From positions 197,037 to 261,036 of the forward strand of contig JAWQFM010000034.1 of the NCBI GenBank assembly GCA_033442325.1: 64,000 bases of DNA, written 5' to 3'. The notes under the pieces are model-generated. The model was given only the letters and a program-made list of their open reading frames with translations, ran no database searches and was not told the origin of the DNA. Each line of letters begins with the position of its first letter. The first letter of the stretch is position 1. The DNA comes from Salpingoeca rosetta. Lineage: Eukaryota > Protista > Choanoflagellata. This document shows, in pieces, positions 6,147-64,000 of the stretch. The position numbers and the translations under genes were made by a program.

Positions 6147-6720
6147 CCGCGACCGTGACCGTGACTATGACCGTGGTGGCATTCAAACATCCCTTCCTGA
6201 CTCTGATTGTGCGAGTGTGTGTCGTGTGTGCATGTATGCGAGCAATTAAAACAACACCGATCCAGTAAGTTTATTCCACACAATTGAGTCAGTCCACCTC
6301 GACTCTTTGCAGCAGCACCTCCACCACCACAATCGCCACCGCCACGCAATGCTTCACTTGTTCGCTCGCATCCGCTCAGTGAAGACTCTTCAAGCGTTTA
6401 TTGCATCGAGCAAGCATATCCTCCTCGAAACAACTGTCGAGGATTGAAACAAGCCATCAATACCAACAGGCACATGCAGATGCAACAAACAGTCGCGCGT
6501 CCACTGCACACACGTACACACACGCGTGCGCGACGTGTTCACACCACACATGGACATCACGCAAAACACACCACAAACAGGCACAAAGCAACGCAGATAG
6601 ATTGATAGTTAGGCAAGTTAAGCAGCCAACAACGACACATGCACGCGCACACGCACACACACGCACACACGCACACACGCACACACGCACACGCACACAT
6701 ACACACACAGGGGCAGCCAC

Positions 6721-8448
6721 TCATTGCAGATGTGTAGTGTGTGGGCTCCGTGTTGGCGAGATTGTAACGGGCGGGAAGCGGGGCTCTGCCCAGCGGAATG
6801 GCGACAGCAACAACGATGTCGACGATGACGAACAAGTGGTGGTCGTTGCCATGCGCGAGTGCGTGGATGTGACACCAGCGCCAGCACCAGCACCAACACC
6901 AGCACCAGTAGGGTGAGACGGGGCAGTGACTGGTGTGCTGTGGTGTGAAGCATGGGCGTGGCTGTCTGATCCTAGAAGTTGCAGGTCCACTGTCTCCGGT
7001 GGTGGCGGCGGCTGGAAGGTGTGGGTGGATTGGCCAAGACTGCTTGCATTCGACGTGGAGATGGGGTGGGTGTGCACCGCGGTCACCGCCACAGAATTTC
7101 CCATACCAAACTGGTGGTCCTTGTGCGATGCCATCAGACCGTGCGCCACATCCCACGCGTCGTCGATGGTCGAGACAGCAGGCATGCTGGTGGAGGATGG
7201 CATGGCAGGTGCCGGCACAGCGAGCGAGAACGCGCCCGTGCTGAGCTGCGGCTCGGATACCGACCGCTGAGTTGCCGTGCTGCGATGCAGTCGTGGTACT
7301 GCCACTGCACCTGTGCTTGAAGCGGCTGTGGGCAAGGGAGCAGGGGCGTGGGCACTTGTTGCTGCTGCTGCTGTTGTTGTTGTTGTTGGTGGTGGTGTTG
7401 CTGTCACAGCACCAAGCTTAGTGGACGTGGCGGCGGCGTCAGAGCTGCGAGTGTCACGCGATGAGGATGACGAATGTGTTTGACGTGTGTGACGGCCGCT
7501 GCTGCTGCGCTGTGAGCGGGAAGGAGTCGTTGCTCCTTTCACGGGCGTGGTTCGCGTTGAGGATGCACGCGAACTTGCTGGCGTGCTCTTGCGTGTGGAA
7601 TTGGAACGAGTGCGCCTGCGCTTCCCCTTGCGAGTGCTGTTGCTGCTGCTGTTGCTGCTGTTGCTGCTGTTGCGGCTGCTGCCCGAGCCAGCAGTGGCGC
7701 CCACGGCGGCGGCCTGTGTGTGCGCCCGCTTGGAGTGCTCCGTCACTTCCAACACGTGCTGCAAATCAGCCGCCATGGCACCTTTCATCAGGCGATCCGC
7801 GAGATCTGTCGGCACACAACAGTTAACATGAATGTTCGTGTGAGTGAGTGCGATGGTGGTGGTGAATGTGGTCGTGGTCGTGGTCGTGAAGGATTGGTGT
7901 GAGCGCTTTGGTGGAAAGCGCAACAGGGGGAGCGTGGCAACACGTCACACCAACACGTATAAACACACACAGACACAGCACAAACGTACGCACGCCTTCA
8001 CACAACTATGCATGTACAGGTGTACACGTGTACACGAGTACACATGTGCGTGTACATTGACACGCTGCCGTCTACACACCGGGAAGGAGGCGGAAGCAGG
8101 CGAGAAGACGACACTTTGTGCATTTCTTGTGCACAGACTTGTGAAAGGCGCTTCGCGGGCACTCCCCACTGCACCTGCAGCCCTTGAACTTGGTGGTCTT
8201 GGTCAGGGCAAGCAGGTGTGCGGCCACGCCCTGCGGCGATGAAAAGTCGGCAAAGTTGATCCCGCGGCGCAACTCCTGATTGCATTTGGAGACAAGTGGG
8301 AACGGACGGAGTGTAGGTTGTGCCAGGTTGATGCAATGTGGGTGTGAGCGTGGTGGACTTGTGTCATCAACATGGCAGCTGCTGCATAATGTGCCACACA
8401 CACACACACACACGCACACACACACGCGCGCGCACACACACACACAAC

Positions 8449-8522
<74 letters not shown>

Positions 8523-11187
8523 ACAGCACATTCTCACGTCATACACGCACAAGCACATACAACTCACATACAAGCACCCAGTTACAAGCACACACATACA
8601 CACGCACGCATTGACAAACGCACATTCAATCGCATGGCAAACACGCACAGTAAACAACCATGCACACCACAAACAAAACACCACATGCACCATCTCAACA
8701 CACCTTGGCCACCATGGTTCGCGCGTGCTTGTACACCATGCCGTAGCATGACTTGCAGTAGTCCTTGTCTTGCTTGGCCTTGTCCTGGCACACCACGCAC
8801 AGTGCGTTCCTGCGCAGCTTGGCGATGAGCTGCCTCTCCTCCGGCGTCACTTGCATGTCATCGAGCGAGGGACGGGTGCAGCCATCATCATCTACCATGG
8901 CAGCATCACCCTCAGCGGAACTGCTTGTGCTGTACTTGCTCCTCTTCTGCCATGGCTGCTCTCCATCATCGTGACACCTGTCACTGCTGCCAGCTACAGT
9001 CTGCGCGTTTCGCTTCTGCCTGTGCTGCTTGTGTTGTGACTTTGGGCTGGCGGTGCGACGACCGTGTGCTGCCTTTGCACGCCGCCCTCCCCTACTTGGA
9101 GAGCGCCGCGATGATGATGATGATGATGATGATGATGACGGTGATGAGCCAGTGCCCTTGTTCGTGCTGCCTGCTGCTGCGATTGTCTGTGAGCGAGAAC
9201 CATTGGCGGTGCTGTTTTGCGCATGCGACGCTTCTGCGTCGTGCTGCTGCTGTTGTTGTTGGAACGACATTGGGAGAGGCAGTACACCATCTGCACCGGT
9301 GACGTTGTGGTGCTGGTTGCCGCTGCCGCTGTTGCTGCCGTTGCCACCCTCTGGCGGCGTTGCGAGCAGGTCGTCAAACACGCTCGACTGCAGAAAGCTC
9401 CAGTCTGCATCCGTAAGCGGTGCCTGATCGAGCAGAGCTGACGGTGCTGGCAGAGGTGAGGCCATGCGCACGGGGCCTGCATGTAGCGTGTGGGCTTGCT
9501 CATATGGGTGGTCCATTGCTGCTGCCGTTGTTGCTGTTGTTGCCGCTGCTGCTGCTGCTGCTGGCGCCGATGGTTCGGTGCTGTGTGTGGGGAAATGGGG
9601 CTGGTGGGCGTGTGACGCAGTGGTGCTATTATGACCCACCCCATTGTCGGTGTGAGCATGATACATGTGCGCTGTTTCCATGTGCTGCTGCTGATGCTGG
9701 TAGTGCTGCTGGTACTGGCGCTGACGGTGGCAAGGGTTCAGGGCAGGCTGTCCCACCGACGCCTGCAAATCTGCAGCGAGGGCTTGAATGGTGTCGGCCG
9801 ACTTTTGCGAGGTGATGTAGCCCTGGCCTTGCTGCTGATGCTTTGCGTTGTGGTACTGCTGCTGTTGCTGCTGTTGGTACTGACGGTACGCATGTTTGTG
9901 GTCGTTAATGCTGTTACTGCTGTTGCTGCTGTTGCTGCTGTTGCTGCTGCTGTGGTGGTGGTGGTTGTGCTGCTGAATATGGTGCTCTCGCCCATGCGAT
10001 GACTCCAACGTTGTTGCGCCTGTAAAGAGATCCAGGCTTGAGCTGCTCAGGGTGAGGTCATTGGCCTCATCTTCGCCCTCCACGCTTGCCAGCAGCTTGC
10101 CCGTAGTTCCTGGCTGCGTGCCCGTCACGGCCGGTGGAAACAAGAACGTGTCATCGGTCTGCATCAGCCACGCGAGATCCTACGTACGTGGCAGTAGTAC
10201 GTGCGTATGGTGAGCACATGCTTGGGAGCAAGGCGCATGCCATGTGCATGTCGAATGAATTGAAAACGCCAAACGCGCAAAGCACGACACATCAGGCACA
10301 CACGCATGCACGCACGCACGCACGCACACATACACACACACGACCGCACACACACACGCACACACCTCATCTGAGGAGAGGAAAGCCAGTGGGCTGAGGG
10401 CGGTTGGCGCTGCTGAAGTCATTGTCACGCCTCCGGCTGTCGTGGATGTTGTTGGCATGTTGAAGGAGCTCTCGCCAGGGTGTGGTGCTGACATGATGCG
10501 AAACAGGGTCGGTGTCGTGGGCACCGAAGGCAGCGGGGTGGGGCAGCTGAGCTTGGGGAGTGCAAAGGAGAGTGGGGCAGAGCCTGTCTGGTTGCCGTCG
10601 TCGCCACGCTCACGAATGGGAGCAAACTTGGTGCTGTTGTTGTTGTTGTTGCTGCTGCTGCCTGTGTTGGTGCTGTCGGGGTCTGAGACGACACTTGAGG
10701 AGCTGTTGCTGATGGTGCTGAGGTTGCTTGCAGACTCGTGCTCTGGCTCAAACCCTTCCGCAATGGGCGCAAAGGGTGCGGCGAGTGACAGCCTGTGCTT
10801 GTGGTTGCTGGTGTGGGTGTCGTGCCTGGTGCTGTTGCCGTGGTGCGTGTGGAACGGAGATGTGGACCGGGAAGCAGACGAAAGGCAGGCGTTGGAAACA
10901 ACGGAAGCTGGGGACACAGATCGTGAAGTGGTATTGGAGGGTGGGCAGGGAGCGGAAGACGCAATGGATGCTGCGGAGCACGTTCGTTCCAGGTTCCGTG
11001 CTGGTGTGGATGCGGCGCAAGTGTCAGTTGTGGATGTGGATGATGGTGACGGGGATCGTGATGATGATGGCGAGGATGACGGGCAGCTGGGCGCAGGGGA
11101 AGCTAGTGGCGCTGCGGTTGCTGGTGCTGGTCTGCAGGGGTTCGCGTGTGCCTGCGCCGAGGGCTTGCGGTGAATGCCGATGTCCAT
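6721..11187 (-). CDS. About 1190-aa low-complexity (S/T/Q/H-rich) putative transcription factor with a nuclear-receptor-like double C4 zinc finger
   Basis: Exons 11187-10366, 10179-8704, 8275-8080 and 7805-6721 have GT-AG boundaries and total 3579 nt, in frame. The spliced core reads CVVCQDKAKQDKDYCKSC..(46 aa)..CRCSGECPRSAFHKSVHKKCTKCRLLACF, followed by a basic NLS-like RKGKRRRTR. The true start may lie slightly upstream. Confidence 0.75.
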
Positions 11188-17812: not shown

Positions 17813-20807
<2,995 letters not shown>

Positions 20808-61957: not shown

Positions 61958-62003
<46 letters not shown>

Positions 62004-62641
62004 TGTGTGTGTCTGTGTGTCTGTGTGTGTCTGTGTGTCTGTGTGTGTCTGTGTGTGTCTGTGTGTGTGTGTGTCTGCCTTCCTCTCTCAGTTCTATGCG
62101 TCTCTCCCCGTATCTCTCAAGTCTATACGTGACTACAGCAGCAACGACGGCATGGAAAATGAAAGAAGAAGAAGAAACAAAAGGAGAAAGCAACAGTGAG
62201 AAGCAAGGCAGGACGGCGCCATGGAGCCAACAAGCACAAGACCTCCAACCACAACAAGAAGCGGGAATGCAGGCGATCCTGCGTCATCACACCAAAACCA
62301 CCTCAAGACAACGAACGCCACATGTGGGACGGGTCAGAGACAAGACAGCAATCACAAGGAAACAAAGGCAAGGGGGGCGGGAAAAGAGCCTGTGGGTGCA
62401 AGTGAGAATGGGCAGGAGAAAGCACTGAAATGAAATGTGATGAAATGCAATGAAATGATGACAGCAACAACAACATATGTAAATGACAAGACAACTGATT
62501 TTGAGTAACGACGAGCAAAGTGGGCAGCTTGCAGCGTGCAAGTGCTGGAACTGCGAGTGATGGCGAAGTGTAGCACTGGACCTGACGATGGCTGTGTACC
62601 TGACATACCCCCTCGTACACCGGCCCATGACACGTGCACGT

Positions 62642-62943
62642 TTACGAGCCCTTTGCCTTGCGCAGCTTGTCTCTGTAGAGGGTCATGAGAGGGTTCTTGG
62701 TCATGGCAGCCGTCAGCTTCACAATCCAGTCGTTCATCTCCTCCTCGCTCGTCGTCTGCATCTTGTACGACGAGTGGTGGCCCTGGCAAGTGGCGGTGGT
62801 TGTGTATGTGTACGTGTGCATATGTGTATGTGTGTGTGTGTGTATGCGTGTATGTGTGTATGTGTGCGTGTGTGTGGCAATGGGTGAGGTGTTTGATGTT
62901 GCTGCTTGCTCACAGCCAGCGAAGGTGCATCACGCTGTGCAAG

Positions 62944-63009
<66 letters not shown>

Positions 63010-63396
63010 NNNNNNNNNNNNNNNNNNNNNNNNNNNNNNNNNNNNNNNNNNNNNNNNNNNNNNNNNNNNNNNNNNNNNNNNNNNNNNNNNNNNNNNNNNN
63101 NNNNNNNNNNNNNNNNNNNNNNNNNNNNNNNNNNNNNNNNNNNNNNNNNNNNNNNNNNNNNNNNNNNNNNNNNNNNNNNNNNNNNNNNNNNNNNNNNNNN
63201 NNNNNNNNNNNNNNNNNNNNNNNNNNNNNNNNNNNNNNNNNNNNNNNNNNNNNNNNNNNNNNNNNNNNNNNNNNNNNNNNNNNNNNNNNNNNNNNNNNNN
63301 NNNNNNNNNNNNNNNNNNNNNNNNNNNNNNNNNNNNNNNNNNNNNNNNNNNNNNNNNNNNNNNNNNNNNNNNNNNNNNNNNNNACGCCTCTCGTAT

Positions 63397-63464
<68 letters not shown>

Positions 63465-63771
63465 CAATACCACCATCACCATCATCATCATCACCACCAT
63501 CATCGCCACCACCATCATCATCATCACCACCGCCACCATCATGTGCATGTGCACGGGCGCACCTTCCTTGAGCATCCACCCGCTCTTCTCCGCGTCAACA
63601 AACGTCTCCACAAATCCGTCGTTCGTGTCGTGCAGGTCAAACTCTTTGTCGCGGATGCTCTCGTAAATGCGCTGGTGGGCAGAGATGGCGAGAGGTTGAG
63701 GAGTGGGAGGGGGATTGGAGGAGGTGAGGTGGTCGTGGTTGTGTTGTGTTGTGTGTGTGTGTGTGTGTGTG

Positions 63772-63859
<88 letters not shown>

Positions 63860-64000
63860 CTGGTTTTGCAACGTGTCACACGTTTAGAGGTAAACACCGC
63901 AAGCGCCACCACCACCACCACCACCACCACCACCACCACCATCAACACATACGGTGAGCAGGTCAGCGTCCAGGCTGCCGCCGTTGTCAATTCCACGGTT
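62642..64000 (-). CDS. CYTH: Cytohesin/ARNO/GRP1-family Arf-GEF, 3' part (end of Sec7, PH, polybasic tail); partial
   Basis: Exons 64000-63953 (NRGIDNGGSLDADLLT), 63671-63563 (RIYESIRDKEF..TFVDAEKSGWMLKEG), [gap], 62782-62642 (GHHSSYKMQTTSEEEMNDWIVKLTAAMTKNPLMTLYRDKLRKAKGS*). These match cytohesin NRGINEGGDLP..LYESI..TFFNPDREGWLLKLG..GNH..EEWI..RDPFY. Confidence 0.88.
63010..63383. other. Assembly gap (probably holds PH-domain exons of the cytohesin gene)
   Basis: Run of N. Confidence 1.

What the first reader, a model, noticed from the sequence alone, without database searches (positions are those of the whole stretch)
8080..8799. Nuclear-receptor-type double C4 zinc-finger DNA-binding domain in an apparent choanoflagellate, visible only after splicing
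Seen: joining the exon ending at 8704 to exon 8275-8080 gives C-x2-C-x10-C-x2-C-(46 aa)-C-x5-C-x12-C-x2-C-x4-C, i.e. CVVCQDKA..CKSCYG..KFKGCRCSGEC..HKKCTKCRLLACF. Known: the nuclear receptor DBD (zf-C4) is C-x2-C-x13-C-x2-C-x15-C-x5-C-x9-C-x2-C-x4-C, typically starting CxVCGDxA and ending CxxCRLxKC(L/F). The start motif, the D-box spacing and the ninth Cys all match here. Nuclear receptors are regarded as animal-specific, and a similar long-spacer NR-like finger occurs in insect Trithorax. No ligand-binding domain is evident: the rest is S/T/Q/H low-complexity sequence with a basic NLS-like stretch. Inference: a pre-metazoan stand-alone NR-like DBD transcription factor, possibly a relative of the domain later fused to an LBD. 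The P-box equivalent (CKSCYG versus CEGCKG) predicts different DNA specificity.
Basis: partly seen in the sequence, partly recalled or inferred. Interest (0 to 1): 0.88.

Follow-up and report, generated by a model that had tools for sequence, protein, structure and literature searches.

The report
Choanoflagellate nuclear-receptor-like zinc domain
A spliced gene of a choanoflagellate (probably Salpingoeca rosetta) encodes a conserved eight-cysteine, two-zinc domain that is predicted to fold like the DNA-binding domain of animal nuclear receptors; it has no detectable sequence match to that domain and no hormone-binding part, so it bears on where the animal domain came from.

Summary
The joins are supported by homology. 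An intron-less paralog on another contig of the same genome, and a transcript-derived Choanoeca flexa protein, both align straight across the two junctions. A phase-1 intron after the "LP" motif sits at the same place in Monosiga brevicollis and in two environmental genes.

The domain defines a small unannotated family. Its named sources are all choanoflagellates. Eight Cys are conserved, and the domain is strongly basic. No Pfam domain is found anywhere in the proteins, so there is no ligand-binding domain.

By sequence it is not a zf-C4 member: Pfam, PDB sequence and language-model searches show no nuclear-receptor (NR) signal. Two confident AlphaFold models nevertheless have NR DNA-binding domains as their best PDB matches with two aligners. 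Those matches cover 93-96% of the NR domain, but the scores are modest (Z 5-7, Foldseek E about 1).

My reading is an NR-DBD-like double treble-clef domain with a 46-51-residue helical insert, probably DNA-binding. Common ancestry with NRs is unproven.

Pfam zf-C4-only proteins in choanoflagellates were published in 2019.

The parts
10366..11187 (-). Putative upstream coding exon (S/T-rich, 274 aa from the first plausible ATG). The true start is uncertain.
   Evidence: It is in the same frame as exon 1. GT donor at 10365-10364 and AG acceptor at 10181-10180; the splice removes the in-frame TAG. No Pfam domain.
10180..10365 (-). Intron (GT...AG) with a GT-rich 5' part
   Evidence: the spliced CDS has no internal stop.
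8704..10179 (-). Exon 1: Q/H/S-rich low-complexity region ending in zinc module 1
8704..8799 (-). Zinc module 1 (CVVC-x10-CKSC) plus the start of the helix that follows it (YGMVYKH...)
   Evidence: This is the most conserved block of the family (CKSCYG.LYKHIK).
8276..8703 (-). Intron 1, GT-AG, with a long (GT)n tract and a C/A-rich 3' part
   Evidence: Homologs are continuous across the join. RNA-like runs hold word shares that fit its absence.
8080..8275 (-). Exon 2: 46-residue inter-module linker (helical in the homolog models) and zinc module 2 (C-x5-C-x12-CTKC, then RLLAC)
7806..8079 (-). Intron 2, GT-AG, phase 1
   Evidence: a phase-1 intron lies at the identical position after 'LP' in Monosiga brevicollis (L007) and in two environmental genes (L009, L010).
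7715..7805 (-). Start of exon 3: C-terminal helix of the domain (DLADRLMKGAM...)
   Evidence: It aligns with ELALQLLRMHL... of homologs. That segment is helix 111-143 in model 2.
6721..7714 (-). Rest of exon 3: S/T/A-rich tail with a basic KGKRRRTR stretch; stop at 6721-6723. Further introns are not excluded.
   Evidence: No Pfam domain.

Best explanation
The gene encodes a protein of about 1,190 residues that is mostly low-complexity sequence. Its only globular part is a basic domain of about 130 residues that should bind two zinc ions through eight conserved cysteines. In the models each zinc site is a treble clef: a CxxC knuckle, then a second CxxC at the start of a helix. The two modules and their helices pack as in the DNA-binding domain of nuclear receptors, with an extra helical insert of about 30 residues between the modules and a long C-terminal helix. 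It belongs to a small, unannotated family whose named sources are all choanoflagellates, with at least 2 and possibly 3 copies in this genome. The most likely function is sequence-specific DNA binding by the helix after module 1, in a nuclear transcription regulator whose disordered Q/S/T-rich regions act as effector parts. Shown here: the gene structure, the family, the Cys conservation and the predicted fold match. Inferred: zinc binding, DNA binding, nuclear location, and any common ancestry with NR DBDs.
For: Splicing and family. Frame-preserving GT-AG junctions. An intron-less paralog at G000:C25:530500-530907 aligns across both joins (33% over 115 aa, E 6e-21). The C. flexa transcript protein P0002 is 41% identical over 108 aa, E 7e-21. 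The phase-1 intron position is conserved. Eight hits were found in 1.84 billion representatives; the named ones are Barroeca monosierra, Choanoeca flexa and Monosiga brevicollis. The exon skipped in the M. brevicollis gene model was recovered.

Fold. The models have pLDDT 83.4 and 86.7, both with pTM 0.77. In VIA-align against 48,161 PDB representatives, NR DBDs are 11 of the top 15 (model 1) and 11 of the top 14 (model 2). The best match is ERR-gamma 8ifo_A: Z 6.0, rmsd 2.8, 72 of 76 residues, 21% identity. In Foldseek, the top 15 for model 2 are all NR DBDs, with prob 0.5-0.87 and TM by target 0.51-0.60. In the second look, all top 50 are NR DBDs, with Z up to 6.9, and RXR 4cn5_B gives rmsd 2.6 over 71 of 75 residues. 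For model 1, the top 3 ESM Atlas rows are zf-C4 clusters. Helices start at the second CxxC of each module (combined with Cys positions).

Other. Short motifs are shared with the SF-1 DBD as printed: C-x-S-C-x-G-hydrophobic-hydrophobic, and C-x2-C-R-x3-C-[LI]. The domain core has net charge +6 to +14 and pI 8.9-9.7 in all nine members.
Against: There is no sequence-level link to NRs. No PF00105 hit at E<=10 for any of 11 rows. Family profiles against PDB sequences find no NR chain. Language-model features find no zf-C4 cluster.

The structural scores are modest. Foldseek E is 0.7-3. VIA Z of 5-7 is below the value of about 8 that the tool itself calls safe, and unrelated helical chains score Z 4.8-5.6. 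For model 2 the Atlas ranks an archaeal 74-aa protein and bacterial ComF-type double zinc ribbons ahead of zf-C4. Pfam's only weak hits are to double zinc ribbon families (E 0.006-0.035).

The models carry no zinc, and I could not read their coordinates. The spacings differ from NRs: x10 instead of x13, and a 46-51-residue linker instead of 15-17. I have no read-level evidence of the splice junctions and no binding data.
Confidence: 0.6

Rival explanations
1. Convergent double zinc module. The domain is an independent combination of two zinc ribbon or treble-clef units, like the double zinc ribbon of ComF-type proteins. It would have no ancestry in common with NR DBDs and might bind protein or RNA rather than DNA. 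The NR resemblance would then be the generic packing of two CxxC-helix units.
For: The only weak Pfam hits are DZR_2 and DZR. The Atlas search of model 2 ranks ComF/DZR_2 clusters and an archaeal protein ahead of zf-C4. There is no sequence similarity to NRs. Spacings and linker length differ from NRs.
Against: In the PDB, NR DBDs rank first for both models and both aligners, covering 93-96% of the NR domain. No zinc ribbon, LIM, GATA, RING or PHD chain is in the 50 rows listed by the exhaustive search. Helices begin at the second CxxC of each module, which is treble-clef rather than ribbon geometry. The CxxCR-x3-C motif is shared. The domain is strongly basic.
Confidence: 0.25
2. True divergent homolog of the NR DBD. 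The family and animal NR DBDs would descend from one choanozoan double treble-clef domain, and this lineage gained (or NRs lost) the inter-module insert.
For: The same fold evidence as above. The non-ligand Cys four residues after the last ligand is kept in most members, as in NRs (the NR feature is from established knowledge). Structure-based identity to NR DBDs is 13-23%, against 3-14% for unrelated rows. The same genome holds another finger with weak direct zf-C4 similarity. Pfam zf-C4 in choanoflagellates is reported in PMC6792448.
Against: No statistical sequence signal. About half of the structure-based identity is the eight Cys themselves. hhalign of the family against the C23 zf-C4-like finger gives nothing, so there is no bridge. 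No animal hit was found in 1.84 billion representatives.
Confidence: 0.33
3. Artefact: a chance Cys pattern, a wrong splice model, or animal contamination.
Against: Conservation across at least 9 genes, including an intron-less paralog and a transcript-derived protein. The intron position is conserved. RNA-like runs hold word shares that fit loss of intron 1. The nearest relatives are choanoflagellates, and the assembly is 55.4 Mb in 68 contigs.
Confidence: 0.02

Closest known systems
Nuclear receptor DNA-binding domain (Pfam PF00105 zf-C4, 'double treble clef'; e.g. RXR 4cn5_B, ERR-gamma 8ifo_A)
   Same: Two Cys4 modules, each with its second CxxC at the start of a helix. The predicted overall packing is the same, and NR DBDs are the top PDB matches. 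A CxVC start, a CxxC-x-G-hydrophobic helix start and a CxxCR-x3-C motif are shared. The domain is basic.
   Different: No HMM match. Loop x10 instead of x13. Inter-module linker of 46-51 residues instead of 15-17, forming extra helices. Second module C-x3-6-C-x12-14-CxxC instead of C-x5-C-x9-CxxC. No ligand-binding domain. Found in choanoflagellates, not animals.
Stand-alone Pfam zf-C4 proteins reported in choanoflagellates (Lopez-Escardo et al. 2019, PMC6792448; cited in PMC8942334)
   Same: A non-animal, LBD-less NR-type zinc domain in choanoflagellates.
   Different: Those were detected by the Pfam model, whereas this family is invisible to it. The paper's text names no species or sequences, so identity with this family could not be checked.
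zf-C4-like finger in the same genome, G000:C23:207857-208111(-) (L012:1486-1740:-)
   Same: Same genome, sits in a low-complexity protein, has a CxxC-hydrophobic-helix motif and a CxxC-x4-C end.
   Different: It has weak direct NR similarity: PF00105 17.4 bits, E 0.006, below the 21.1 cut-off, and SF-1/RXR/VDR/GR in PDB at E 0.17-1.6. It shows no detectable relation to this family.
Double zinc ribbon (Pfam PF18912 DZR_2 / PF12773 DZR; ComF-type)
   Same: CxxC-x10-CxxC spacing of module 1. Weak Pfam hits (E 0.006-0.035) and Atlas shape matches (TM by query 0.35-0.42).
   Different: All hits are below the cut-offs. These families are prokaryotic. The models here have helices after each second CxxC, and the PDB searches list no zinc-ribbon chain.
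NR-type finger of Drosophila Trithorax
   Same: Said to be an NR-like double finger outside the NR family.

Membership tests
Pfam PF00105 zf-C4 / nuclear receptor DBD | Score at or above the curated cut-off (21.1 bits) against the family HMM | tested here: not met
   No PF00105 match at E<=10 for the window exons, the paralog or any of 11 alignment rows. The whole-genome PF00105 scan hits other loci, not this gene.
Pfam PF00105 zf-C4 / nuclear receptor DBD | Eight zinc-ligand Cys in two C4 modules | tested here: met
   Eight Cys columns are conserved in nine members. Zinc binding itself was not tested.
Pfam PF00105 zf-C4 / nuclear receptor DBD | Canonical spacing C-x2-C-x13-C-x2-C-x15-17-C-x5-C-x9-C-x2-C | tested here: not met
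   The family has C-x2-C-x10-C-x2-C-x46-51-C-x3-6-C-x12-14-C-x2-C.
Pfam PF00105 zf-C4 / nuclear receptor DBD | Conserved non-ligand Cys four residues after the last ligand (CxxCRxxxC) | tested here: inconclusive
   Present in 8 of 9 aligned members. It is Ser in the P0003/P0009/L021 clade and Val in the weak C18 copy.
Pfam PF00105 zf-C4 / nuclear receptor DBD | Double treble-clef fold with two helices packed into one globular domain | tested here: met
   This rests on predicted models only. NR DBDs are the top PDB matches for two models: Z 5.2-6.9, rmsd 2.6-3.6 over 67-77 residues, 93-96% of the NR domain. The scores are modest and Foldseek E is about 1.
Nuclear receptor (whole protein) | C-terminal ligand-binding domain (PF00104) | tested here: not met
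   No Pfam domain at all in the window exons, the 1,316-aa paralog, P0001, P0002 or P0003.
Nuclear receptor (whole protein) | Sequence-specific binding to hexameric half-sites through the helix after module 1 | not testable with these tools
   Only supportive: net charge +6 to +14.
Double zinc ribbon (PF18912 / PF12773) | Score at or above the curated cut-off (27 bits) | tested here: not met
   Best score 16.8 bits, E 0.006, over module 1 only.

The most novel reading that the evidence does not exclude
This family and the animal nuclear-receptor DBD descend from one stand-alone double treble-clef DNA-binding domain that existed in the common ancestor of choanoflagellates and animals. Choanoflagellates would then keep several diverged LBD-less lineages of it: this family, the C23 finger, and the other NR-like family noted by the scan. 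The animal innovation would have been the fusion to a ligand-binding domain.
Probability: 0.3. Interest if true: 0.85.

Novelty: new variant of a known kind. Interest (0 to 1): 0.62.

Why it matters
Nuclear receptors are a hallmark animal gene family, and the origin of their two domains is an open question. One paper reports Pfam-detectable zf-C4 domains without an LBD in choanoflagellates. The family described here is invisible to Pfam and unannotated, and the Monosiga brevicollis reference model even skips the exon for its second zinc module. It is nevertheless predicted to adopt the NR DBD fold. If that is confirmed, it widens the pre-animal repertoire of NR-type DNA-binding domains. It also provides intron-less, experimentally tractable members in S. 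rosetta, which is amenable to CRISPR editing, for testing what such domains bound before ligand control evolved. If the resemblance is convergent, the family is still a new lineage-specific zinc domain of probable transcription regulators.

Tried and rejected
No reads were laid.
- The search for homologous proteins with the exon-1 ORF found nothing. The real protein is about 1,190 aa, outside the tool's length window.
- Region searches with P0002 and P0001 added no new members.
- Searches of single exons or of the family profile against Pfam and PDB sequences gave only chance-level hits: DnaJ, FYVE, BMP receptor, scoloptoxin.
- ESM Atlas feature searches gave nothing at or above 0.9.
- hhalign of the family against the C23 zf-C4-like finger showed no relation.
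- The PF00105 hit on C31 (24.1 bits) lies in a junk ORF without paired Cys, and I rejected it as spurious.
- The first metagenome scan with piecewise alignment A3 failed for lack of a conserved stretch. The repeat with A4 found only 4 loci and no short-linker intermediates.
I folded the intron-less paralog and the C. flexa member instead.
- LIM, GATA, RING and PHD folds were considered; none appears in the 50 rows listed from the exhaustive search of 48,161 PDB representatives.
Full report
OBSERVATION. Exon 1 ends at 8704 on a full codon and is followed by GT. The intron ends with AG at 8277-8276. Exon 2 (8275-8080) has 65 codons plus one base and is followed by GT. The next AG is at 7807-7806, and exon 3 starts at 7805, completing a GAT codon. 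If intron 1 is not spliced, the reading frame stops two codons later. A further upstream intron (10365-10180) removes an in-frame TAG and links an S/T-rich exon. The four-exon CDS has no internal stop and gives about 1,192 residues from the first plausible ATG at 11187. The Cys spacing of the spliced product is C-x2-C-x10-C-x2-C-x46-C-x1-C-x3-C-x12-C-x2-C-x4-C.

ARE THE EXONS REALLY JOINED? No reads were laid, and I kept those places out of every later call. The joins are instead supported in four ways.
- The same genome (55.4 Mb, 68 contigs; the window is C34:197037-261036) holds a paralog on C25 in which the whole domain lies in one uninterrupted 1,334-codon frame. The spliced window domain aligns with it across both junctions (33% over 115 residues, E 6e-21).
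- The transcript-derived Choanoeca flexa protein P0002 aligns across both joins as well (41% over 108 residues, E 7e-21).
- The phase-1 intron directly after the 'LP' motif is at the identical position in Monosiga brevicollis and in two environmental genes.
- Word shares in public runs fit splicing. For 7806-8703, DNA runs hold 0.94 of the words. One RNA-like run holds 0.24, where exon 2 alone would give 0.22. Three hold 0.52-0.55, where exon 2 plus intron 2 would give 0.53. The same runs held 0.78-0.86 of 6700-10200. This last line of evidence is indirect.

THE FAMILY. phmmer of the paralog domain against 1.84 billion representatives found only eight proteins. The named ones are from Barroeca monosierra, Choanoeca flexa and Monosiga brevicollis. 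The rest are environmental. The M. brevicollis reference model XP_001746650 skips the small exon that encodes zinc module 2; I recovered it at L007:6782-6874. Environmental contigs L009 and L010 have the same three-exon layout. A metagenome scan added only one further member. A profile search of the window's own genome finds the window gene, the C25 paralog and a weak third copy on C18.

Across nine complete members, eight Cys are conserved. The consensus is C.VC...AK.GK..CKSCYG.LYKHIK, then 46-51 residues, then C-x3-6-C-x12-14-KC..CRV.AC...LP. The extra Cys four residues after the last ligand is Ser in one clade, so it is not a ligand. The domain core is strongly basic in every member, with net charge +6 to +14. 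No Pfam domain occurs anywhere in these proteins, so there is no ligand-binding domain.

IS IT A NUCLEAR-RECEPTOR-TYPE DOMAIN? By sequence, no.
- No member matches PF00105 even at E<=10. The only weak hits are double zinc ribbon families, at E 0.006-0.035.
- Family profiles find no NR chain among PDB sequences.
- Language-model features find no zf-C4 cluster.

By predicted structure, yes, at modest scores. I folded the intron-less paralog domain (pLDDT 83.4, pTM 0.77) and the C. flexa domain (pLDDT 86.7, pTM 0.77). In both models a helix starts at the second CxxC of each module, which is treble-clef geometry.
- An exhaustive VIA-align search of 48,161 PDB representatives puts NR DBDs at 11 of the top 15 (model 1) and 11 of the top 14 (model 2) ranks. 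Scores are Z 4.0-5.2 for model 1 and 5.2-6.0 for model 2. The best is ERR-gamma 8ifo_A, with rmsd 2.8 over 72 of 76 residues and 21% identity.
- Foldseek ranks NR DBDs first, with all of the top 15 for model 2, probability 0.5-0.87 and TM by target 0.51-0.60. Its E-values are 0.7-3, which is not significant.
- A second look gives NR DBDs in all top 50 rows, with Z up to 6.9 and RXR 4cn5_B at rmsd 2.6 over 71 of 75 residues.
- No LIM, GATA, RING or PHD chain appears among the rows listed.
- In the ESM Atlas, zf-C4 clusters are the top three rows for model 1. For model 2 they come only sixth, behind an archaeal protein and ComF-type double zinc ribbons.

Short motifs agree with the SF-1 DBD segment printed: C-x-S-C-x-G followed by two hydrophobic residues, and C-x2-C-R-x3-C-[LI].

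CAVEATS. The tool warns that Z under 8 can reflect a common arrangement, and unrelated helical chains score 4.8-5.6 in the same lists. The two models share most of their alignment. I could not inspect coordinates or zinc geometry. The fold resemblance is therefore likely but not proven, and ancestry is open.

CONTEXT. A whole-genome PF00105 scan hits two other loci. The one on C31 is spurious. The one on C23 is a distinct finger in an 886-codon frame, with weak but direct NR similarity: PF00105 17.4 bits, E 0.006, below the cut-off, and SF-1, RXR, VDR and GR in PDB at E 0.17-1.6. It shows no detectable relation to the present family.

Lopez-Escardo et al. 2019 reported Pfam zf-C4 domains without the hormone-receptor domain in choanoflagellates and concluded that the DBD predates animals (PMC6792448). 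PMC8942334 repeats this. The scan's own notes list several NR-like zinc-finger readings on other DNA of this genome, and one follow-up describing a family of at least 13 genes (s1-431372). I could not test whether that family is related to this one, and I do not count it as evidence.

VERDICT. It fails the sequence and spacing criteria of zf-C4 membership. I file it as a new variant of a known kind, working most likely as a DNA-binding module of a transcription regulator. My estimates are about 0.6 for that reading and about 0.3 for true common ancestry with NR DBDs.

Noticed in passing
G000:C23:207857-208111 (-), = L012:1486-1740:-: A different double zinc finger in an 886-codon low-complexity frame of the same genome. 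It has weak direct similarity to NR DBDs: PF00105 17.4 bits, E 0.006, below the 21.1 cut-off, and phmmer hits to SF-1, RXR, VDR and GR DBDs at E 0.17-1.6. It has a CxxC-IKFF helix start and a CFGCLYQRC end, and appears to lack one Cys of module 2.
   Followed up: partly
G000:C18:788277-788405 (+), = L017:1501-1629; also L017 about 1135-1260: A possible third, diverged family member split over small exons. One exon carries ICGICYSGLYNDVKK and another carries C-x5-C ... KCTRCRSIHV. The first CxxC was not located, so it may be a pseudogene.
   Followed up: partly
L007:6782-6874 (Monosiga brevicollis CH991554.1): The reference gene model XP_001746650 (P0007, 1,151 aa) skips the exon encoding zinc module 2 (HCDP...KCARCRVLSC...LP). 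It may also fuse this gene to an upstream FN3-containing gene.
   Followed up: partly
window 17988-18522: An assembly gap (run of N) flanked by (GT)n on one side and (CA)n on the other. It explains the apparent low GC of 18001-20000. The low GC of 62001-64000 was not inspected.
   Followed up: partly
window 8276-8703, 10180-10365, 7806-8079: The introns of this gene start with GT-rich or (GT)n sequence and end C/A-rich. This matches the polarised (GT)n...(CA)n intron architecture noted by another first-stage note (s1-431465).
   Followed up: no
Nothing was laid, and the places were not examined or sent anywhere afterwards.
   Followed up: no
P0004 (Logan contig, 521 aa): An environmental family member with about 230 residues between zinc module 1 and the KCTRCR motif, and only one upstream Cys in module 2. 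It may be an unspliced or chimeric prediction.
   Followed up: no
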